A DNA stretch of 64,000 bases from Podarcis gaigeae (taxonomy: Eukaryota): the NCBI GenBank assembly GCA_964106915.2, contig OZ066929.1; one strand, written 5' to 3'. The position numbers and the translations under genes are program-made. Positions 3,420 to 64,000 of this stretch are shown piece by piece (position 1 is the stretch's first letter; the number at the start of each line of letters is the position of its first letter). Under the pieces are notes generated by a model that had not been told where the DNA came from, did no database searches, and saw only the letters and a program-made list of their open reading frames with translations.

Positions 3420-4380
3420 CAGCTGTCCATTGGAGAAGAAGGGTGAGGCTGGATAGATCCAGGCTGGCTGACCTGGGAAAATTAGGAGCTGAGGGGCAGA
3501 GGTGGAAGTGATGGGCCAGAATGAGAGCAGTGAGGCAGGTAGGGCTGGAGAGAGGTGCTTAGTGTTGGCTTAGTGTTGGCATCAGAAGTAAAATTAGCAG
3601 CTGCCATTTGATAAAATGTTTGAGGTGACATACAGCATACTTTTTGCATATGTACAGTGGTACCTCGGGTTAAGAACTTAATTCATTCTGGAGGTTCATT
3701 CTTAACCTGAAACTGTTCTTAACCTGAGGTACCACTTTGGCTAATGGGGCCTCCCGCTGCTGCCGCTGTGCTGCTGCCGTGCAATTTCTGTTCTCATCCT
3801 GAAGCTAAGTTCTTAACCCGAGATACTATTTCTGGGTTAGCGGAGTCTGTACCTGAAATGTCTGTAACCTGAGGTACCACCGTATTGCTATCAGCATACT
3901 TCAGCTCATTACAAAGTGATGCAAGCTGTGGTCCTTGAGGAGTTGAGTCTTTATTTAGTGTAAAGCAGGGGGAGAAATTGGAGAGGGGTGAGGGAAAGGC
4001 AAAAGTAACATGGAATGAATGCAAGCAAGTGGGCAAATCCAGTTGGAGCAGGCGTTTTCTGCTAGCTGATGAAAAGGACTGGAGCTGGGTAGACTAAGGT
4101 AGTGCATGGCTTGACCTGTGGAGAGGGAGATGTGATGTGGAAGGGGTTGTAAGGGCCCCAGTGGTTGAATTGAGCGACAGTGAGTTGGAGGGTAATTTTG
4201 AGATTGCATGCTGAGTTGCAGGAAGAAGTTGAAGAAGGGCCTGCTGTAGATGGCTTAAATTGATGCTCAAGGCAAAGGATTGATGGAATAGGAAGTGGCT
4301 GAGCTTGAGCTGGGAAATGGATTTGGAAGGCTGAAGGACCATGGGGAATAGGAAGGATGGATCATTTAGGAGCATAAAAT
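3420..4380 (-). mobile_element. Degraded L2-like LINE fragment interrupted by a MITE
   Basis: Purine-rich + strand; Leu/Ser/Pro-rich broken frames on the - strand; recognised by pattern only. Confidence 0.35.
3653..3884. mobile_element. Tc1/mariner (pogo/Tigger-like) MITE, family A
   Basis: TA|CAGTGGTACCTCGGGTTA ... TAACCTGAGGTACCACCG|TA; near-identical to 6557 and 62553. Confidence 0.85.
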
Positions 4381-6556: not shown

Positions 6557-6786
6557 TACAGTGGTACTTCGGGTTAAGTACTTAATTCGTTCTGGAGGTC
6601 CGTTCTTAACCTGAAACTGTTCTTAACCTGAAGCACCACTTTAGCTAATGGGGCCTCCTGCTGCTGCTGTGCCGCCGGAGCGCGATTTCTGTTCTCATCC
6701 TGAAGCAAAGTTCTTAACCCGAGGTACTATTTCTGGGTTAGTGGAGTCTGTAACCTGAAGCGTATGTAACCCAAGGTGCCACTGTA
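6557..6786. mobile_element. Tc1/mariner MITE, family A
   Basis: TA|CAGTGGTACTTCGGGTTA ... AACCCAAGGTGCCACTG|TA. Confidence 0.85.
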
Positions 6787-49264: not shown

Positions 49265-50536
49265 GTTTAACAGCATATGAAGTACTGCAGAAATGAGGAC
49301 TAAACTCCAGCATTCTAGTAAGCTTTGCCTTTTCTGTAAGCTGGCATCCTTAAGTCAATGAAAGATAAGGCTTTCATTGGGACAGTGTTTGTGGGCAGGG
49401 CCCAATGCCTTCTGCAATTTTTCCTATCTGAATTCTTGCCCCTACAGCCTGAGAGGAGGTTTACAATTCCTTCCCTTGCCCACAGAACCTGGTTTCACTT
49501 ACGATTTTGACAGAACTCCCACCCACCTATACAGAAATGCCAGGCAAACATTGCTTACATTGATAGAAGTGGAGAGGGGAAGATGTATGTTTAAAATAAA
49601 CTAATCTTCAGCAAGAATTTTTAGACACAATGCATCATGTTACCTGCTAATCCATGCCTGTGTGAATCAGGTATTTTAAACCTTCAAGTGCTTTACAGTG
49701 GCTGATATTTTCCCCTTGCCATGTATTCCATTCATTAGGAAAGAGCCAATGCTTGAAGACTTTAGCTTTTTATTTTTCATATACATATATATATATATAA
49801 ACCCTGCAACTCAGACACTCTTAAATTTACACACATCAACAAAAATATATAACAAAAGCATTTTTTGTTTGTTTGCTAATTTTATAGCTTACACGGAAAG
49901 CGCAACACCCCCTTCCTCCCCCCGTTTTTGGTTGATGAGTTTGCACTTTTTAACCACTCGGAAAACAAAGAGTGTCTAAAGCAAAACCTTAACTGTTTTC
50001 CCCAGTTTGTGTTGAAAGCTGTTCACTTCGCTTTGAAGGGAATGGAAAACCGAACTCTGCAGGAAGTAATTCCGTATGGAAGCAGCTAGCTACAGTATTT
50101 CTTTCTGGTGTCCATTTAGAATTCTGGGGTGTGGACAGAGAAGCAGAAAGCTTTTCTTAGGCACTGGACCAGCATGGTGAAGTACGGCATCCTGTAATAC
50201 TTCCTGGCATGTTTAAGGATGAAGAGAGTTGTCATCAGCACCTGCTCTGAAGGCTGCATGACAATCTCATTTTGGTACAGGCACCAGCTTCCTTCACATT
50301 CTCCGTGTGTCACCTGCTGCTGCTGCTGCTGCTGCTATCAGGGCAGAGCAATTCAAGATGAATTCCAATGCACTCGATCTGTTAGCACAAGAATTTACAC
50401 TTCTCTCTTCCTCACCCCCTCATCTGTCCCCTGCTCCGGAGGGTTGAGAAAACAGATTTTTTTTGGGGGGGGGGACCACCAGGGAGGAAGCATAAATCCT
50501 TGTGCTAACAGAGCAGGTTCCTTGGTGCTACACTGA

Positions 50537-52499: not shown

Positions 52500-52617
52500 C
52501 TGGTCACCTGCCGATCTCTTCTCGCCGTTGGCGCCCTGCAGGAGCCCCGCCTCTTCAGGAAGTTTATCTGACTTAACTTCAACTACAATCTCGTCTTTAT
52601 GCGCTTCGGGCTTTGTG
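52500..52617 (-). CDS. MCAM: MCAM cytoplasmic cassette exon (long isoform)
   Basis: ccctag|TKPEAHKDEIVVEVKSDKLPEEAGLLQGANGEKRSAGDQ|gtaggc; 118 nt; VVEVKSDKLPEE signature. Confidence 0.94.
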
Positions 52618-52844: not shown

Positions 52845-53212
52845 GGGACGCAGGTGGTGCTGTGGGTTAAACCACAGAGCCTAGGACTTGCCGATCAGAA
52901 GGTCGGCGGTTCAAATCCCCGCAGCGGGGTGAGCTCCTGTTGCTCAGTCCCTGCTCCTGCCAACCTAGCAGTTTGAAAGCACATCAAAGTGTAAGTAGAT
53001 AAATAGGTACCGCTCCGGCGGGAAGGTAAACGGCATTTCCGTGCGCTGCTCTGGTTCGCCAGAAGCGGCTAAGTCATGCTGGCCACATGATCCGGAAGCT
53101 GTATGCCGGCTCCCTCGGCCAATAAAGTGAGATGAGCGCCGCAACCCCAGAGTTGGCTAAGACTGGACCTAATGGTCAGGGGTCCCTTTACCTTTATAAA
53201 GCTTACCTTTAT
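52845..53212 (+). mobile_element. Sauria-type SINE, full length
   Basis: GGGACGC 5' end, B box GGTTCAAATCC, (TACCTT)-type tail, 11-bp TSD AAAGCTTGCAA at 52834-52844 and 53213-53223. Confidence 0.9.
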
Positions 53213-53578
53213 AAAGCTTGCAAAGCACTATTTGACCAGTGACTTGGGTGGGACAGAAGTCAGAAAGGCGTAATCTCATGGCCAAGGGCAAATGTCTTCT
53301 GCCTGCAGCCATCACTGATCAAGCTTTGTGTGTCAGAGGAGCTGCTCCCCCCCCCCCCCCAAGGCTGCTGAGTGGGAAATGACACTGCAAAGGGCCTAGT
53401 GGGCAACAGCAGTTCAAGGTCCACCCCACTTCCTCCCTCCCATGGGATCAGAAGCGCGCTGCTTGGTGCAAGGAGACTGGGAGGGGGCAGGAAGGGAAGA
53501 AGCGTGGTCTCTGGTAGATGGATGAGAGGGAAGGAGGGAGGCACCCAAAAGGCTGCAAGGAAAGGTGTGTGTGCTTAC

Positions 53579-53720
53579 ATCTCTTGTTTGCCTGAGCGGC
53601 CACAGGTGAGCTTCCCTTTCTTGTGCAGGAAGTAAAGGACGGCGCCCAGGACAGCAATCGCCAGGATGCAGATGACGACGGCCACAATGATCACACCTTT
53701 GCTCTCCTGTGCTGTCTGCT
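53579..53720 (-). CDS. MCAM: MCAM transmembrane exon
   Basis: gagcag|EQTAQESKGVIIVAVVICILAIAVLGAVLYFLHKKGKLTCGRSGKQE|gtaagc; 142 nt; hydrophobic TM segment plus KKGK juxtamembrane motif. Confidence 0.95.
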
Positions 53721-54791
53721 CTGCTCGGGAGAGGGGGGTGGAGGAGGAGGAAAGGAAATCCAAACAGAATCACCCTTCTTGCAGCCACAAAGCAGCTCTC
53801 AATATTTCCCTGGCTTCCTCCCAAAGTGTAGCTTGAACCAGGACTGAGCCCTTGCAGGTTGAAATAGAGAGGGGCCTCTCTGAGCATGGGCAGAGGGCCA
53901 CGAAGGCACAATTCCTGCAGGCATCACTTCATTGTTCTGTGAAGAAGATTACGGCACTGCTGCCATTTCCGCTCGCCACTTTGGAAGAACTGCCATTGGG
54001 AGGAAGAGAGAGAAAAGGCATTTCTGGGCAGAACTAAAGCAAAGATCTGCTCAAATGCAAAGGCCACTCAAAAAGTTGCTGGAGGGTTCTGGCAGCAGAT
54101 GTTTTGGGACTACAATTCCCATCGTCCCTGATCGCTGGTCAGGCTGGCTGCTGGGAATCTGCTGGGAGCCCAAAACGGTTGAAGGGCACCAAATTGGGGA
54201 AGTCTCCAATACATCTCAGAAGGAGACGGAAGGAGTGGAAAGCTCCTGGATCTTATGGCAAGACTGCCCCTCCTTCCTTGCAAAGCTATGCCCCATAATG
54301 CTTCATGGCAAGGCTCCATAAGTTGCTGTTTCTGGAACACAGAGGAACAGCACAACATGGAACTCAAATTCAGCTCATTTCTTTTTTTAAAGGAAAAAAA
54401 GCAGGTTCCTAGTCCTCTTGGCAATGGAGTTTAGCCAACACCTGCTCCAACCTCAGGAACTGACTTAGATTCCCAGAGGGGCAGGAGGGCAGCTGACGTA
54501 TAGCTCCTGAAGACTAGCAAAGAAAGAAACAAATAAGACAATCATGCACATTGACGCAGCTTCTCTTCCCCGCCCCCGCCGGTAGCCCAAAACTCTTAAT
54601 TTTTGGTTGTGTTTTTCAAAGCACGCACAGCCCTGGCTACTGTCTCTGAATCTGGAGTCAAGAAGACCAGCCAGCAAAATGCTAACAGGCGGCAAGAGCA
54701 AGCGTTGGTCCGATTGGCTGAGGAAGCCCCTCAGGATGAGGCCCCCCCTAACCAATGGGAGAGGCGGCTAGAGCGGAAGTAGAAAGGATAC

Positions 54792-54887
54792 CTTCCTCAG
54801 CCCTTCCAGGAGTTTGGGAAGTTGATGTCTGGTTGTACCCAAACTCGGAAGTTTCGTTCCCTGGCAAGGTGGTGTTGGAAAAGTCAT
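54792..54887 (-). CDS. MCAM: MCAM stalk exon, copy 1 (TM-proximal)
   Basis: gcccag|(D)DFSNTTLPGNETSEFGYNQTSTSQTPGRAEE|gtatcc; 96 nt, phase 1-1; sequons NTT, NET, NQT. Confidence 0.75.
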
Positions 54888-55840
54888 CTGGGCAGCGGCG
54901 GGTGGAGAATGCAGGCAAATGTTAACATTTAGTGCTAAGGATGCTGGGAAGCTCTTGGCTTCCAAAGGAGAGGATGGCTCACATGCCCCCTACCCATCTC
55001 CCCCTGCCTGGAGCGGCAGGTGTTAAAATGAGTCCATACAAATGTTCTGTGCCAAGACCCATTTTCAGTGAACAAACAAACAAAAGGTATTCAGTTCCCC
55101 AGTAAGCAGGTTCCTTCCCCGCCCCGCCCCCCAAAAAAGTTAACAGTACGACAAGCTGATCAATGAAGTATTGTATTGACTTACTCAAACACACACCCCA
55201 CCTTAGATTACAGGGTAGATTACAACATCAGAAAACATAATAACAGGCAATCAGTAAAAAACAAAAACCACTAAAACATCTAAAATCTGTATCAACAATC
55301 TCCACCACAATAGGCAATGAACTGGCACATTGAGCAATGCCTAGATTTCAAAAGAAAATTTATATACATATTTACATATTAAATTACACATATGTTATTG
55401 TGCTGTCACTATACAGAGCAAGAGTATAGCCTAAAAGAAACAAAAACGAGATATAGTACCTGGATCCATGGGAGGTCCATTTGATAAAGGACACAAACGT
55501 CAGTTTTGCAAGTTTATGTCAAACATTTCCCCTCTACAGCATCCCACTTCTGTAGTGACCCGTCAGCTACAACCCACCCCAACCCCTGCCAAAGCAGGAC
55601 AGGGCTGGATTCCCCAAGAAGAGAACGTCAGCCAGAAACCATCACTGCCACCACGCCCTGCCCCACAGCACACCCCCTTCTTGAATCCCCAAAGCATCCC
55701 CTGACATGCTCTCCAAGTTCAGTTTCAGTAGAGGTCAAGCCCTGCAAATCGGAAGGAAAAGTTTGGCTCTGAGCACGTGCAGAGGGCTATGCAAGCAACT
55801 TCCACACCAGCCTGAGTTCTGGCTTATCTCATTTTGGAGG

Positions 55841-55841
55841 G

Positions 55842-55898
<57 letters not shown>
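55841..55898. repeat. (GA)n microsatellite, imperfect at its 5' end
   Basis: Direct reading. Confidence 0.95.
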
Positions 55899-55902
<4 letters not shown>

Positions 55903-56723
55903 TTAAGCACAGCTGCCCAGCTAAACTGCTTCCAGTGTCCTCCCCTAATATTTCCTTTGGTGCCCACAGGCTGCTGTGGAAGAACTGCAACTGTTTTTGA
56001 GAGAAAGAGAGACACGGAGAGGGGGCTTTTCTCAGGGGCCCAACATAGGCCTGCTTAAAAGCCAAAGCAACCTGAACGGGTGGTAGTGGAAACAACTTTC
56101 AGATGCAGACTAAGAAATAGCACAATATCACGGAAGGTGCTGGAGGGTGAGGGGCGGCTCCTAGTTGCTGTAGCAAAGCTGATTTTTCCAACCAGCTCCA
56201 TCTCCCAACAGAGCTACCCCATAATGTATGACATTGGGGGGGGGGGGCAGGATTGGAATGATGTGCTACACGCAGGGCTGGGCATCATCTGAGATTTCCT
56301 GGAGGCGCAGAAAAGCTGCAGGGCACAGAAATCCAATTCGGCTCCTGTTGCTTTAGAAAAGCAGCTCCCTAGCCCTTCAAGACTGTAGGCATTTTGTGAG
56401 AGAGCATCTGGTTGCTGAAACCTCAGAAGCTGAATGAGATTGCCCGGGGGGGGTGTGTGTGTGCAGAATCAAGCACATTCACAGATCAACGTCCTCCTTC
56501 CTGCAAAAAAACCACATTCCACTTTTTGTTGCTGCTTTTCAAAATGCTCTGACGTTTCCCTGTGAGTTTGACCGGTCTGCATCAATGCTAACAGGCAGCG
56601 AGAGCATGCGTCAGTCCAATTGGTGGATGGGGACCACCCCTGGGGGTTCCCCCACACCAATGGGAGAAGCTGCCTCAGCAGAAGGAAAAAAGATACCTTT
56701 CAGCAGGTGACTTCACGACATAC

Positions 56724-56792
56724 CTTCGGCTGTCTGGTTGTACCCAAACCCTGAGGTTTCATTCCCTGGCATGGTGGGGGTGGGAAAGTCCT
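56724..56792 (-). CDS. MCAM: MCAM stalk exon, copy 2
   Basis: ctccag|(E)DFPTPTMPGNETSGFGYNQTAE|gtatgt; 69 nt, phase 1-1; a second donor at 56697 gives 96 nt containing TGA. Confidence 0.65.
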
Positions 56793-57754
56793 CTGGAGAG
56801 CAGCGTATGGGGAAGGGAGGAAGTGTTAATGTCCAGCGCAAAGGATTGTGGGACTCCTGTCATTTGCCGGATCATGTTGGGCTTCTCACCCGCAGGACAA
56901 TTTATTGTCCTACCCCCTACGGCAGGCTTGAAAGAGTCTATAGGCAATAGCACACAAACGTTCCTAGCCAAGGCTCTGCTTTTAGTATGAACCTCTCGCA
57001 GGATGTTGGAATGGAGGGTTAATAAACCCAAGAGGCTGGTGGCAGCATCTCAATTACGCCAGCGACGTTTTACCAATACAGCAATTAAATGCCATTCTAA
57101 TTGAAAAACAATTCCTCAGCTCAGTTGAAAAATCAATTAAATAGCACCAAAGTTAATGAAGCTTTCAGTCTAGGAATTGTGGGTTTTTAGCAAACCAGCA
57201 ATTCATAAGCGCTAGAGCCAAATACTAAAGGCCAAAAATGCATTTAAACTGTTATGAAGTACGGTAGTCGGACAGACATAAACGACAACAGTTTTGCTGG
57301 TAATGCCAAACATACCTCATCTATGGCAATCCATTCCCAGAGTGGTAAGCCAGACACAACAGCCACACACCTTGCTTCCTGCTTTTAAATGAAATGTGTG
57401 GAGCGCATGGGAACTGGCTGGGCTCTCCAAGCCCCAAGGACAAAAACAGCAAGCAGAATGCATATGTACATACACCGCCCCCCAGTCTCAATATATAGTC
57501 ACCTTTCTCATATCCAGAAAATGGCTCTCAATATTTTCCTGGCTTCCTCCCAAAGCTTAGCTTTACCCGGGGCTGAGCCCTGCAGGTTGAAATAAAGATA
57601 GGCCTCTGAGCGTGGGCAGAGCATCATGAATTGCCACACAGGCCTTAATTCTGGCATTTTGTAAAGAAAATTACCCTGCCATCATTGCATTGCTGCCTGT
57701 TTCTGCTTGCCCACAGAGACCAATTCAGAAGAAGAACTGCTGCTGCCTTTGGGA

Positions 57755-57757
<3 letters not shown>

Positions 57758-57805
<48 letters not shown>
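57758..57805. repeat. (GA)n microsatellite
   Basis: Direct reading. Confidence 0.95.
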
Positions 57806-57809
<4 letters not shown>

Positions 57810-58481
57810 CCTTTCTAAACAGGACTAGCAAGGACCTTCTCAAAGGGAACCCAAGCAGCAAGAGCTTTCAGGGGCATCAGGGAAACAGTGCAGTATCAGA
57901 GAAGATGCTGGAGAGAGGATGGGGAGAGGCTCCTGCACTTTGTCAAAACGTGTTCTCTCTCTCCCTGGCCTACAGAAAGGCTACCCCACAAAACAATTCA
58001 CTGGATATGCTATCAGGATGAGGTGTTGCCTTCAATATCCTAGAAGCACAGAAAAGCAACAGAACATGGAAATCCAATCCAGCTCCTGTTTCTACTGAAA
58101 AGCAGGTTCTTAGCCCTCAAGACTGTGGGCATTCTGTTTCAGCAACTGACCAAGGCCTGCTGGAACCTCAGGAGCTGAATGGGATGGCCAGGAATGCAGC
58201 CTCAAAAGGAATTATCATGCACATTCACAGGGCATTTTCTTCTCCCTGCAAAAAAACCAAATCCCACTTTTTGTTGCTCACATTTCAAAGAGCTCACATA
58301 GCTCTGACCTTTGCTTTTGGGTTTGGCCAGTCTGCATCAATGCTAACAGGCAGCAAGAGCATGCGTCTGTCCAATTGGTGGATGGGGACCGCCCCTGGGG
58401 GTTCCCCCACACCAATGGGAGAAGCTGCTTCAGCAGCAGAAGGAAAAAAGATACCTTTCAGCAGGTGACTTCCCGACATAC

Positions 58482-58550
58482 CTTCGGCTGTCTGGTTGTA
58501 CCCAAACCCTGAGGTTTCATTCCCTGGCATGGTGGGGGTGAGAAAGTCCT
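58482..58550 (-). CDS. MCAM: MCAM stalk exon, copy 3
   Basis: ctccag|(E)DFLTPTMPGNETSGFGYNQTAE|gtatgt; 69 nt, phase 1-1; a second donor at 58455 gives an open 96-nt exon. Confidence 0.65.
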
Positions 58551-60150
58551 CTGGAGAGCAGCGTAAGGGGAAGGGAGGAAGTGTTAATGTCCAGCACAAA
58601 GGATTGTGGGACTCCTGTCACTTGGCGATCACTGATGGGCTTCTCACCAGGAGGATAATGGATTGCCTGCCTGCTATGGCAGGCATGAAAAAGTCTATGT
58701 GCAGAGGTATATAAATCTTCCTAGCCAAGGCTCTGCTTTCGGTATGAACCTAAACACAGGCATTGGAATGGAAGGTTAATAAACCCAAGAGGCTGGTGGC
58801 AGCATCTCAATTAAGATGTTTTAATATGGCAATTAAAAGCCATTCCTCAGCATATTTGGAAAAATCAATTAAACAGCACCGAAACTTGGTTAATGAAGTT
58901 TTCAGTCTAGGAATTGTGAGATTTTAGCAGATGAACAACTCGTAAGCACTTGAGACCAACACTTAAGGCTAAAATGCATTTAAAATGATACAAAATACAG
59001 GAATCCAACAGACAAGAACAGCAAGTCTTTCAGGGCCATGCCAAACATACCTCATCTACTGCAGTGGTAAGCCAGATACAACAGCCACACACCTTGCCTC
59101 CTGCTTTTAAACAAAAGAGCAGGCTGGGCTCTCCAAGTCTGAAGACGAGAACAGCAAACAGGACACACACAAACACCCACACCCACCCCTCCCACTTGCA
59201 ATATATAATAGCCTTTCTTGTATCCAGAAAACAGCTCTCAATATTTCCCAGGCTTCCTCCCAAAGCTTGAACCAGGGCTCAGCCCTGCAGGCTCAAATAA
59301 AGACGGGCCTCTGAGCATGGGCAGAGCGCCATGAAGGCAATTTCCACACAGGCCTTAATTCTGGTATGTTTGAGGTGTGTGTTTTGTAAAGAAAATTACG
59401 CCACCATGACAGAATTGCTGACCGGTTTCTGCTTGCCCACAGAGACCACTTCAGAAGAACTGCTGGGAGGAAGACAGAGAAAGAGAAGGCCTTTCTGAAC
59501 AGGACTAGCAAGGACCACCTCAAAGCGAAAAGGCACCCAAGCAGCTGCTGGAGGGATTGGGTAGCAAGAGCTTTCAGAGACATCGCAGAAAAGGTGTCAT
59601 AGAAGATGCTGGAGGGAGGATGGGGAGAGGCTCCCGGACTATGTCACAAAGTGCTCTCTCCCTCCCTGCCTTCAGAAATAGTTAACCCCCCAAAAAAATT
59701 CACTGGATATGGGGGGCACTAAACATGCTGCTATCAGGACTAAGTGTCACCTGCTATTTCCTGGAAGCACAGAAAAGCCAGAGAACATGGAATTCAAATT
59801 CAAGTCCTGTTTCCTCTCCTCTCCTTTTGTTTTTTTTAAAGCAGGTGCCTAGGCCTGTTGCCCGTGATGCAAGAGAATGTGTGGCAAACACCTACTGAAA
59901 TTTCAGGAAATGAATCAGATTGCCAGAGGGGCAGGGGAGGGAGGTAGAACTATGCACATTTCTAGCTTTTCTTTATCCTGGCACAAAATGGTGCTTGCTT
60001 TTTAAAGCACATACCTGTGCATGATCTGAACTCAGAAGACCAGCCTAACAGGCAACAGCATGCATTGATCCGATTGGTTGGAGAGGATTCTCAGAGTGCC
60101 ACTCTGCAACCAATGGGAGAGGCTGCCCTAGCTGAATTATAAACAGATAC

Positions 60151-60264
60151 CTTTTTGTGTGTCATTCCCTTGCTGCATTGCTGCAGGAGTTTGGGGAGTG
60201 GGTGTCGGGTTGTACCCAAACTCTGAAGTTTCATTTTCTGGCAAGGTGGGGGTAGAAAAACCAT
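60151..60264 (-). CDS. MCAM: MCAM stalk exon, copy 4 (TM-distal)
   Basis: ctccag|GFSTPTLPENETSEFGYNPTPTPQTPAAMQQGNDTQK|gtatct; 114 nt, phase 1-1, open frame. Confidence 0.68.
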
Positions 60265-60847
60265 CTGGAGAGCAGCAGGCAGAGAATGTAGGTAATGTTA
60301 ACAATTTAGCACAAAGGGATTGTCAGAAGCTCTTGGCTTCCAAAGGAGACAATGGCTTAAATGACCCATTGGAGGCTCACTCATTAAATTAGGTCTGCAG
60401 AATTTCGACGATTCATCAATTTAGAATAAATTTCGCGTAACTAAAAAGGTGCCGCCCTCAATAACGCAGTCAGAAGCTTCCCCCAGTTAATCTTATTGAT
60501 TGAAACTGTGCATGAAGAAGTTCTGGATTTTAAAAGGGGGGGGAATGGAAACTATATATATAAATTAGGCATATTTTCTTGCTCTTCAACTATAGACAAC
60601 GACGGTATGTACTAAAATGACAAAAAGTAAGTTATAGTACCTGTTTACATGGTGGTTCTATTTAATAAAAAGACAAACATTCACAATCTACAGCATCCCT
60701 TTCCCAAAGTGGTTAACCAGATTCACCTCCCGCTGCCACACACCTCTCAAAGCCCCAAGAAACAGAACGGCAGGCAGGAAGACCAAACCCCCTCCCCAAA
60801 TTCTCTTCTCTCCAAGATTACGAGAGGATACAAATTTTAAGACTTAC

Positions 60848-60850
60848 TTG
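60848..60850 (-). CDS. MCAM: Candidate 3-nt MCAM microexon (CAA)
   Basis: tttttcttttcttttcttaag|CAA|gtaagt: long polypyrimidine tract, AG, 3 nt, consensus donor. Confidence 0.35.
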
Positions 60851-62369
60851 CTTAAGAAAAGAAAAGAAAAAGTAGACCCCTTTAAAAGATTTTGCTAGAG
60901 ATAAAGACAATGGATGAGTGTTATGACAGACTGCTACTATTTGCAATTTCCAGAAATGATGGAAAATTTTTTCGTTTCGATACGTTTTTCCAACTGGATG
61001 GGTGGTTATTTTCATTATTCTAAAACTGATCTTTACTGGGATTTTGTGTTTTTTAAAAAAACCTATTTTAGTTGTTTTTATGACTGCAAATCATTTTGGG
61101 CAACGTGAAAGGCAGTTCATAAATTAATAAAACAATAATAATTGAGTTCAGGGCCATAAGGTGCCAAGGTTGGCATCTGGTACAGCATCCCTCAGGCCTT
61201 CAGGGGGTGGTGACCAAATATTATCACCCCTCTCCTGACATGCAGCATAACCTTCTGCGAGGGCAAAGGGAGCCGAGCAGATAGGCACTCCTCTTCCTCT
61301 CCTCTCACATTTGATGTATTTTACTTACTCAAAACGGATCCCACCTTTCTTCTAGGATAGAACGAATGAGATGGTGGCAGTGCTACATGGGGTTCTCAAG
61401 CAAATTGCCCAACCAGGCTCATCTTTGGTGGGTTTCAGAAAGTCACCTCTCTTGGTGCAGAAGCTTGGGGCCCCGATGGTGGAATTCAAACGTCAGTGCC
61501 CTTCCTGATAGGCGGTGAGGGCATAAGCCCCCGCCGCCTATAAGGAGTCGGATCCTAGCCTGCACCCTGTATTGGCAAATGGGAATGCAGGCTGGGATGT
61601 GGGTTGTGCCAGGGGCAGAGTCAATGGAGCTGACGGTGGGCTTCCCTCAGATCCGCCCCCTGCCCATTTAAGCAGCCCACACTTGGGACACAGCCTGTTT
61701 ATTCCTGCGCCGGGTTTCCCCATCCCACTCACCCACGGTTTACGCTGATAGGCAATGAGTTTGCTGTGGCTATGGTGATCGCCGTTCTTTACGGGCTGGG
61801 TAGGAATTTGCCCACCGGGATAATTGGCTCTTACCGGTGGTTTTGCCTACCTCATAGCAATTTGTTACAACTGGTTGGGCATTGGGACAATCCCTTGTTT
61901 TGGACAGAGGGGAGGTTGTAGTCCCTGCGGGGGATTCGGGGGGAGTGACCATGTCTACATGCCCAGAGGGGCCAGGGCCAAAGGCACTCCCCCACAGCAG
62001 TCCCTGCGGGGGTCACACTATTGGATGTAAGTTTTGGAACCCCTGCCTGGACTGACCACGCATCACTCCCACCAGGTGGGTCAGAAGAAGTATTTAGATT
62101 GCCCCATGCCCAAACCAAATCTCTTTCATCTGTATTTACCCAAAACCCCAGTCTCATTGGTCTCTTATTTATATGGGTTGGGGTATGGGAAGTCAGATGC
62201 CTGGTCCTGCAAGTAGCCCTCCTTGTTCACCTTCAGGACACTCACACCCTCCCCAGCTTCCTCCTTCCTGCAAAGCCTACGTCATCTTCTGTGGGTTCGC
62301 TCCCAGAACATTTGACAGCACATTCATATCCCTTTGACAGTCATAAATGCTCGGTAAGGAGGGGCTTAC

Positions 62370-62402
62370 CAGTCTTGGCATTGGGAGTTCCTCCTTCTTG
62401 CC
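62370..62402 (-). CDS. MCAM: Candidate 33-nt MCAM stalk microexon
   Basis: ttcctctttcttttctttcttcag|(R)QEGGTPNAKT|gtaagc; strong splice sites, phase 1-1. Confidence 0.6.
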
Positions 62403-62552
62403 CTGAAGAAAGAAAAGAAAGAGGAATAAGCACAAGCTGGAAGGGGACTGGTTTGTCACAGGTTGCCTGTCTTGCTGTGAAAGGAATTGGGGTGGGGCTG
62501 ACACAGCCACTGGCTTCATCTGAAACAGACAAAGAGAGAACTCAGCATGGTG

Positions 62553-62798
62553 TACAGTGGTACCTCGGGTTAAGTACTTAATTTGTTCCGGAGGTCCGTT
62601 CTTAACCTGAAACTGTTCTTAACCCGAAGCACCACTTTAGCTAATGGGGCTTCCTGCTGCCGCCACGCTGCCAGAGCACGATTTCTGATCTCATCCTGAA
62701 GCAAAGCTCTTAACCCGAGGTACTATTTCTGGGTTAGCGGAGTCTGTAACCTGAAGCGTATGTAACCTAAAGTGTATGTAACCTGAGGTACCACTGTA
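62553..62798. mobile_element. Tc1/mariner MITE, family A
   Basis: TA|CAGTGGTACCTCGGGTTA ... TAACCTGAGGTACCACTG|TA. Confidence 0.85.
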
Positions 62799-62937
62799 TC
62801 GGAGTTTCAGGGTATTGGTGTTGGAAGATGCAAGTCCACACCCCCTCTCAGGATTCCCCTTTACACCAGGTCATGGGAAATAACCACAGCCTCTCACTGA
62901 ACAGCAATAGTCACATAAAATGACACTCAGTGTAGAG

Positions 62938-63158
62938 CCGTGGTTCCCAACGTGGGGCACATGCCCCACAGGGGGGCAATTTGATTTTTAAGGGGGGCAA
63001 TTCGAGAATGACTTATTAACAGTTAATGGCCTTTTAGACTTTCTCCAAGTGAATAGTTCACTTTTTGAATAATAAGGGTTATATATCACCAGGGGGTGGC
63101 ACCCGGATTTTAGAGATGTTTAGGTGGGGCATGGTCAAAAAAAGGTTGGGAACTGCTG
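62938..63158. mobile_element. hAT (Charlie-like) MITE
   Basis: TIRs CCGTGGTTCCCAAC / GTTGGGAACTGCTG; degenerate 8-bp TSD gtgtagag / gtacagag. Confidence 0.65.
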
Positions 63159-63610
63159 GTACAGAGGAAATACTAAGCTAGATGGACCAGCAGTCTGGCT
63201 CAGCATAAGACAGCTCCCTATGCTCATGAAAGTGGAGTGACATTTTCAGCACAGCTTTACTTCAAACCACCTTCTGGCCTGACAGACTGATGCGCCTTGG
63301 CATACTTGCTTCTGGTGTTGGGGACAGCTGTGATGGAAGAAAAAATGTTGGAGGGTACCATTATTTCCCTAGCCCCAGCCCTTCCCAGAAGGGCAAATGT
63401 ACCCGTCACCACCAACACCTTCTGTGCTCATTCAGGCTTTCGCTTGGCTCGCTGCTTTCCCCTGCGGATATTCAATCTTTACTGTGGAATCGGAGCAAAC
63501 GCCCATTGGGTTTCCCGTGAATTGAAGTTTGCTCTGATTCAGTCCTAAAGAGTGGGACAAGCGGGAAGTGTGGATGAGCCCTCTTCTCAAGACAAAAGGG
63601 ATGGACTTAC

Positions 63611-63752
63611 TCTGTGCCAGCATGAAGTGGTGCTGAGTGGTGCCCATCCTGTTTTTGGCGGTGCAATTGACTCCCGATTCTAGAAGGGCTTCAGTGACTT
63701 GGAACAGGACTGTGCTGTTGCGCTGATGACCCTGCATGACTGAAGTAAAGAC
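63611..63752 (-). CDS. MCAM: MCAM exon encoding the C-terminal half of the membrane-proximal Ig domain
   Basis: ccacag|VFTSVMQGHQRNSTVLFQVTEALLESGVNCTAKNRMGTTQHHFMLAQ|gtaagt; 142 nt, phase 0-1; resembles human VTPELLETGVECTASNDLG. Confidence 0.88.
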
Positions 63753-64000
63753 CTGTGGAAAGAAAAGGGAGGGAGGATTAACGCTCCTAAGGAGAACTTA
63801 AAACAAAACAACCCAAAACAGGGCAGCAAGCACTGTGTCCCTCCAGATATTGCTGCTCTGCAACTCTCATCATCTCTGACCATTGCCCATGCTGGCTGGG
63901 GCTGAAGGGAGTTGAACGGCCAAGTCAGGGATGAGAGGAGTCGCAAATCAACAATATTTGGAAGGACACAAGTTTCCCATCCCTGCAGACTAAAGCATAT

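What the first reader, a model, noticed from the sequence alone, without database searches (positions are those of the whole stretch)
54792..60264. Array of four duplicated MCAM stalk exons: candidate variable-length glycosylated stalk cassette
Seen: between the last Ig exon (63611-63752) and the TM exon (53579-53720) lie four paralogous exons at 60151-60264, 58482-58550, 56724-56792 and 54792-54887. They share the core [DG]F..[PT]T[LM]P.NETS.FGYN.T. Each has a pyrimidine tract plus CAG, a GT donor, phase 1-1 and a length divisible by 3 (114, 69, 69, 96), so any subset can be skipped without frameshift. Each carries 2-3 N-glycosylation sequons and many Ser/Thr/Pro. Frames and splice sites are intact while the flanking introns have many indels. 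Recalled: human MCAM has one ~96-nt stalk exon here. Inference: a lineage-specific CD44v/CD45RABC-like cassette that could vary the stalk from ~32 to ~116 aa, changing receptor height, glycan load and shedding. I know of no description of this for MCAM.
Basis: partly seen in the sequence, partly recalled or inferred. Interest (0 to 1): 0.9.

Follow-up and report, generated by a model that had tools for sequence, protein, structure and literature searches.

The report
Optional glycosylated stalk exons, lizard MCAM
In lizards the adhesion receptor MCAM (CD146) carries a set of normally skipped, sugar-rich spacer exons that different lizard lineages multiplied independently, so one gene can probably make a short or a much taller receptor; this control is known for its relatives ALCAM and CADM1, but I found no description of it for MCAM.

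Summary
Observation confirmed; interpretation partly corrected. The four phase 1-1 exons are real and lie in 1.7-1.9 kb tandem duplications of a Podarcis MCAM intron. They are under coding constraint: 97-98% identical to Lacerta/Zootoca orthologues versus 93% for intron (p 5e-5 to 3e-3), pN/pS about 0.3, indels in frame. The unit occurs across lizards: 4 copies in lacertids, 6 in Rhineura, 2 each in Tiliqua, Anolis and Varanus, one 456-579 nt internally repeated open exon in geckos; none in a boa or a turtle. Anolis RefSeq isoforms include none, one or both units; Varanus none or one. In Podarcis-like RNA runs most contigs were unspliced; one low-depth contig fits a B-to-C junction. Best reading: a usually skipped cassette adding 23-116 acidic, N-glycosylated residues next to the membrane, probably tuning shedding and reach. 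A full ladder, the tissue and the function are not shown. New variant of a known kind.

The parts
63611..63752 (-). MCAM exon ending the last Ig domain (phase 0 in, phase 1 out)
   Evidence: matches Podarcis MCAM proteins
62370..62402 (-).
60151..60264 (-). Optional stalk unit A (114 nt, 2 sequons); inner in-frame acceptor at 60237; groups with Rhineura unit 1
58482..58550 (-). Optional stalk unit B (69 nt, 2 sequons); inner acceptor 58523; second in-frame donor 27 nt further (exon to 58455, 96 nt)
56724..56792 (-). Optional stalk unit C (69 nt, one base different from B); its 27-nt extension (56697-56723) holds a TGA at 56713-56715 found only in this genome of three lacertids
54792..54887 (-). 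Optional stalk unit D (96 nt, 3 sequons, most conserved); inner acceptor 54860
53770..60680 (-). Array of four 1.7-1.9 kb exon-plus-downstream-intron tandem duplications
53579..53723 (-). Transmembrane exon; two acceptors 3 nt apart (53723 and 53720), both used in lacertid models
52500..52617 (-). 118-nt cytoplasmic exon (the known long/short tail switch, exon 15 in mammals)
   Evidence: PMC12701039
49750..51586 (-). Last coding exon and 3' UTR (3' end approximate, AATAAA near 49770)
   Evidence: read from the sequence
60056..60126 (-). Inverted ATTGG...CCAAT element downstream of donor A; paralogues at 58357-58429, 56602-56674 and 54695-54767. Possible intronic stem-loop, not established

Best explanation
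The four segments are functional, normally skipped cassette exons of MCAM that encode a disordered, acidic, N-glycosylated (and probably O-glycosylated) spacer between the last Ig domain and the membrane. SHOWN: intact phase 1-1 exons; purifying selection on the protein; conservation across lizards; inclusion and skipping of homologues in Anolis and Varanus RefSeq models; skipping as the default in lacertid models. WEAKLY SHOWN: splicing of B to C in a congener. INFERRED: weak donors (mostly G|GTATC) make skipping the default, and some cell type or stage includes one or more units, adding 23-116 aa and up to 9 sequons to a stalk that is otherwise about 36 residues from the last cysteine to the membrane. 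INFERRED BY ANALOGY to ALCAM and CADM1: inclusion shields the juxtamembrane cleavage zone with glycans and acidic residues (less soluble MCAM), lifts the Ig head further from the membrane and adds galectin-binding glycans. Lineages lengthened the spacer independently, by exon-plus-intron duplication (lacertids, Rhineura, Tiliqua) or by repeats inside the exon (geckos 81 nt, Varanus 33 nt).
For: Orthologous exon identity 97.7/97.9/97.1% versus intron 92.6/92.7/93.3%, Fisher p 7e-5, 5e-5, 3e-3; the three distinct length changes in lacertid unit A are 9, 6 and 6 nt while 70-76% of intron indels are not multiples of three. pN 0.015-0.020 versus pS 0.040-0.065, on 7-10 changes per pair. Measured between homologous splice sites, 11 of 12 distinct unit lengths over nine species are multiples of three. 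Both sequon Asn are invariant in 15 aligned units. Gecko homologues are open for 152 and 192 codons with 12 sequons each. Anolis X1/X3 include both units, X2 one, X4 none; Varanus X1/X3 include one, X2 none. One contig in run X7 has the 6-letter geometry of the B 69-nt donor joined to a B/C acceptor. Analogy: ALCAM exon 13 loss raises shedding ten-fold (PMC5816644); glycans and acidic residues near the cut block shedding (PMC5385562, PMC12480741); MCAM is shed by metalloproteases and binds galectin-1 through N-glycans (PMC7767164).
Against: None of the Podarcis, Lacerta, Zootoca, Rhineura or Tiliqua models or gecko RefSeq models that I read includes a unit (4 of 19 lacertid cluster members were not listed; the Gekko kuhli model that does is an unverified prediction). 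In four RNA-like runs most contigs run unspliced through A and D and no joint for A or D was listed. The one junction has depth 2.4 and one mismatch even to the Lacerta/Zootoca form. RefSeq isoforms are computational models; I did not see their reads. Two protein searches with the units found nothing, both limited by length and by representatives. No functional data.
Confidence: 0.72

Rival explanations
1. The exons are real and coding but work as a two-state switch (short form, or all units in one block) or one at a time in a narrow cell type, not as a combinatorial ladder. The copy number only sets the length of the long form.
For: Geckos reach a similar length with one large exon, which can only be in or out apart from one inner donor. 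The single Podarcis junction joins neighbours, B to C. Default models skip all units.
Against: Anolis models show three states, 0, 1 and 2 units. Each unit keeps its own acceptors and donors, with extra in-frame sites 27 nt apart. No steric or frame rule enforces mutual exclusion: introns are 1.6-1.8 kb and all phases match.
Confidence: 0.17
2. The conserved thing is a non-coding element (splicing regulator, intronic stem-loop or paired CCAAT-like DNA site, or a device for intron retention and a soluble form); the open frames are a by-product and little protein is made.
For: A conserved inverted element follows most donors. RNA-like runs cover this intron evenly at depth about 13 in two runs. 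Chicken MCAM has a soluble form made by intron retention (PMC13116496).
Against: pN is well below pS and below the intron rate; length changes keep frame, including 81-nt and 33-nt repeat expansions; sequons are invariant; the inverted element shows almost no covariation and is barely more conserved than intron. Flat coverage may be pre-mRNA or DNA.
Confidence: 0.07
3. Neutral leftovers of recent segmental duplication, or an assembly artefact.
For: B and C differ by one base in the exon; lacertid annotation ignores them.
Against: Same array in three genera; B and C introns are only about 76% alike; exon conservation exceeds intron; homologues in five other lizard lineages.
Confidence: 0.02

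Closest known systems
ALCAM (CD166) exon 13 stalk cassette
   Same: Same Ig architecture family as MCAM (own knowledge); optional in-frame exon just before the TM exon; inclusion lowers shedding ten-fold (PMC5816644).
   Different: One 39-nt exon; here up to four (six in Rhineura) duplicated units of 69-126 nt, each with N-glycosylation sequons, and skipping is the default.
CADM1 juxtamembrane exons 8/9
   Same: IgSF adhesion molecule whose stalk exons and their glycans set ADAM17 shedding (PMC5385562).
   Different: O-glycan (Thr) based and small; the lizard unit keeps two invariant N-sequons and has been multiplied lineage by lineage.
CD46 (MCP) STP exons
   Same: Short Ser/Thr/Pro-rich membrane-proximal exons, alternatively spliced, changing glycan load and apparent size (PMC2118878).
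   Different: Complement regulator; 15-aa O-glycosylated segment; not an Ig-family gene.
CD44 variant exons and CD45 RA/RB/RC
   Same: Optional in-frame glycosylated ectodomain exons used in combinations (own knowledge).
   Different: Those are not near-identical tandem copies, and their cell-type control is documented; CD45's are at the N-terminus, not next to the membrane.
Known MCAM isoforms
   Same: Same gene; long and short tails by exon 15 and a shed soluble form (PMC12701039, PMC7767164). Database human isoforms vary in exons 12-13 (PMC13116496). Turtles, parrots and platypus have an optional 6-aa stalk exon.
   Different: No paper found describes a duplicated optional stalk array for MCAM, or any lizard MCAM isoform.

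Membership tests
MCAM/CD146 orthologue | TM and tail sequence of MCAM, 118-nt tail exon, tail-to-tail with CBL | tested here: met
   TM exon 98% identical to Podarcis muralis MUC18 XP_028563330.1; CBL-like exons on the + strand (recognised from own knowledge)
Alternatively spliced juxtamembrane stalk cassette (ALCAM/CADM1/CD46 type) | Symmetric, frame-preserving exon(s) between the last ectodomain module and the TM exon | tested here: met
Alternatively spliced juxtamembrane stalk cassette (ALCAM/CADM1/CD46 type) | Protein-level constraint on the exon | tested here: met
Alternatively spliced juxtamembrane stalk cassette (ALCAM/CADM1/CD46 type) | Both skipped and included transcripts exist | tested here: inconclusive
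   Skipping: all lacertid models read. Inclusion: RefSeq models in Anolis and Varanus; in Podarcis-like runs one depth-2.4 contig
Alternatively spliced juxtamembrane stalk cassette (ALCAM/CADM1/CD46 type) | Glycosylation of the insert and changed shedding or adhesion | not testable with these tools
   sequons present; no biochemical data
CD44v/CD45-type combinatorial, cell-type-regulated array | Several exon combinations, switched by cell type or activation | tested here: inconclusive
   three states in Anolis models; no tissue information; no ladder seen in Podarcis-like runs
Mutually exclusive tandem exon cluster | Exactly one copy per transcript | tested here: not met
   default form has none; Anolis X1 has two; B-to-C type junction
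Orthologue of the mammalian 96-nt MCAM stalk exon | Detectable homology to non-squamate stalk exons | tested here: inconclusive
   DNA profile finds nothing in turtle; protein profile scores platypus, echidna, aardvark, manatee and turtle stalks within the range of their shuffles; short low-complexity sequence limits the test

The most novel reading that the evidence does not exclude
Lizards evolved an MCAM stalk-length dial that has been lengthened independently at least four times, by three different mutational routes, and lost in snakes. A specific cell type or stage switches from a short, sheddable receptor to a tall mucin-like one whose stalk could rival the five Ig domains in length, with up to 12 different lengths from the four main exons alone. 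That would be a natural comparative series for how stalk length and glycans set shedding and reach in an IgSF receptor.
Probability: 0.3. Interest if true: 0.7.

Novelty: new variant of a known kind. Interest (0 to 1): 0.5.

Why it matters
MCAM is treated as having a fixed ectodomain, varied only by its tail and by shedding. A hidden, selected, repeatedly expanded stalk module shows that in lizards the membrane-proximal part is a regulated variable. Current gene models for wall lizards, worm lizards, skinks and geckos miss it. It gives a graded natural series (0 to 116 aa here, up to 192 aa in geckos) for testing the stalk-length, glycan and charge rules of ectodomain shedding. The principle itself is known from ALCAM, CADM1 and CD46, which limits the surprise.

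Tried and rejected
Pfam: no family for the units. Rfam: nothing in 53000-64000. Protein searches with the Anolis stalk region and with a 15-unit alignment: no hits; uninformative, because only cluster representatives of similar length are scored. Anolis X2 and Rhineura X2 had no contig on record; their X1 isoforms did. A 15-nt exon candidate (62505-62519): donor is CT in Lacerta; rejected. TGA in the C extension as a conserved soluble/NMD switch: GGA in both other lacertids; rejected as a conserved device. Intronic stem-loop: conserved outer stem, only 2 of 10 pairs with any two-sided change, z mostly above -2; not established. Orthology to the mammalian stalk exon: not detectable. The binomial figure used a rough count; one search supersedes it.
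Full report
Observation. Each heads a 1.7-1.9 kb block of exon plus downstream intron, repeated four times between about 53770 and 60680. B and C differ by one exon base, but their introns are only about 76% alike with about 99 gaps. The window holds no N.

The gene. The TM exon is 98% identical to Podarcis muralis MUC18/MCAM. The 118-nt tail exon and last exon follow, and CBL-like exons lie tail-to-tail on the + strand (recognised from own knowledge). The stalk and last Ig exon match Podarcis proteins, so the window is very likely a Podarcis wall lizard (inference; the tools code the organism name).

A correction. Every lacertid protein model I read (P. muralis, P. raffonei, P. lilfordi, L. 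agilis, Z. vivipara) goes from the last Ig exon to an 11-codon exon and then to the TM exon, with none of the four units. So the units are extras that are skipped by default. Including them would add 23 to 116 residues, in 12 possible totals counting zero, to a stretch of 36-37 residues between the last cysteine and the membrane.

Constraint. The Lacerta agilis and Zootoca vivipara loci carry the same four units in the same order, which rules out an assembly artefact. Unit exons are 97.7, 97.9 and 97.1% identical in the three pairwise comparisons against 92.6, 92.7 and 93.3% for intron (Fisher p 7e-5, 5e-5, 3e-3), as conserved as the TM exon. The length changes in unit A are 9, 6 and 6 nt, whereas 70-76% of intron indels break frame. 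pN is 0.015-0.020 and pS 0.040-0.065, on few changes. Both sequon asparagines are invariant in 15 aligned units.

Distribution. A DNA profile of the unit with flanks finds, always between the short stalk exon and the TM exon, 6 copies in the worm lizard Rhineura and 2 each in Tiliqua, Anolis and Varanus. Each of two geckos, which were not in the profile, has one locus with the same flanks and an exon core repeated with a period of about 81 nt. Nothing was found in the boa Candoia or the turtle Caretta. The gecko exons are open for 456 and 579 nt with 12 sequons each; Varanus unit 2 has an open 33-nt repeat at its 5' end. Between homologous splice sites, 11 of 12 distinct lengths are multiples of three; the exception is the distal donor of Varanus unit 2, which has an in-frame proximal donor (by hand, 10 of 11 changes at the intron rate of 0.28 has p about 2e-5). 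The tree groups lacertid A with Rhineura unit 1 (99/98), the two Tiliqua units together (100/98), Rhineura 3 with 4 (100/98), lacertid B with C (100/99) and Anolis 1 with Varanus 1 (100/99); deeper forks are open (geckos left out). So several duplications are lineage-specific, and at least one predates the lacertid-amphisbaenian split. Whether the unit descends from the ancestral amniote stalk exon could not be told.

Use. Anolis RefSeq isoforms X1 and X3 contain both units, X2 only the first and X4 neither; Varanus X1 and X3 contain one and X2 none. These are computational models, normally built on transcript alignments (own knowledge); I did not see the reads. They use both acceptor types: the outer one, and an inner one 27 nt downstream that is also present in all four window units. 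For Podarcis, no run on record as RNA holds the region; I laid four guessed-RNA runs from apparent congeners on 54650-60400. Coverage was flat across the intron in two runs, contigs ran unspliced through A and D, and no joint for A or D was listed. One contig of depth 2.4 in run X7 goes from 58552 back to 58488 with four letters between. That is the spacing of the 69-nt donor of B joined to a B- or C-type acceptor, and the letters differ by one base from the Lacerta/Zootoca exon end. I read it as a probable B-to-C splice; a back-splice or artefact is not excluded. Contigs drop rare forms, so absence proves nothing.

Mechanism. Shown: constrained, in-frame optional exons encoding acidic (3-5 D/E against 0-1 K/R), Ser/Thr/Pro-rich peptides with 2-3 sequons. 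Inferred: skipping is the default because most donors are weak (scored with an approximate matrix from memory), and inclusion is confined to some cell type or stage. Inferred by analogy: the insert protects against ectodomain shedding and raises the Ig head. ALCAM loses protection when its 39-nt stalk exon is skipped (PMC5816644); O-glycans and acidic residues near the cut block shedding of CADM1, ALCAM and UNC5B (PMC5385562, PMC12480741). MCAM is shed by metalloproteases and binds galectin-1 through N-glycans (PMC7767164). At about 0.2-0.25 nm per residue for extended glycosylated chains (own knowledge), 116 residues could approach the length of the five Ig domains.

Comparison and novelty. 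The device is of a known kind: optional glycosylated juxtamembrane exons (ALCAM, CADM1, CD46 STP; more loosely CD44v). It is not a mutually exclusive cluster. Reviews list only tail and shed forms for MCAM; one paper notes database human isoforms that vary in exons 12-13. My searches found no description of a lizard MCAM stalk array, in a library that lacks most subscription papers. New here are the gene, the default-off state, and repeated in-frame expansion by exon duplication and by repeats inside the exon, with apparent loss in snakes (one locus, plus snake protein models with short stalks). This scan had noted the dual donors of B and C on this same stretch; I found no note of this module on other DNA.

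Limits. Exons were searched singly by reference; the joined spliced model was left out. No human contig was fetched or compared. Tissue, inclusion level, number of combinations and function remain untested. Verdict: real, constrained, probably regulated cassette; new variant of a known kind; interest 0.5.

Noticed in passing
window 60056-60126, 58357-58429, 56602-56674, 54695-54767 (- strand) and most homologous units: Conserved inverted ATTGG...CCAAT element 25-95 nt after the donor; predicted to fold as a hairpin in most copies but with little covariation; could also be paired CCAAT-type DNA sites.
   Followed up: partly
window 53720-53723: Tandem acceptors 3 nt apart at the TM exon give stalks differing by one Ala; both appear in lacertid models.
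   Followed up: yes
window 56713-56715: TGA in the 27-nt extension of unit C; GGA in Lacerta and Zootoca, so private to this lineage.
   Followed up: yes
window 54650-60400: Even intronic coverage (depth about 13) in two guessed-RNA runs; may be slow splicing or retention of this intron, pre-mRNA, or DNA.
   Followed up: no
L009:31249-31266: Turtle 18-nt optional stalk microexon (AEPIKK); similar 6-aa optional segments in parrots, platypus and a caecilian; not seen in the lizard models read.
   Followed up: no
proteins P0187, P0034, P0047, P0062: Repeated stalk segments also appear in MCAM models of pig-nosed turtle, Discoglossus, shad and a grenadier, unrelated in sequence to the lizard unit; the MCAM stalk seems prone to repeat expansion across vertebrates.
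   Followed up: no
L010:30005-30236: Varanus unit 2 begins with eight 33-nt repeats, most carrying a potential in-frame acceptor.
   Followed up: partly
L006:55575-55690: Rhineura unit 1 has lost the outer acceptor AG and both core sequons but keeps the inner acceptor and frame.
   Followed up: partly
window 62551-62774: A 220-nt interspersed repeat, with copies at about 3651-3870 and 6557-6778, sits just upstream of the 33-nt exon and is absent at that place in Lacerta.
   Followed up: no
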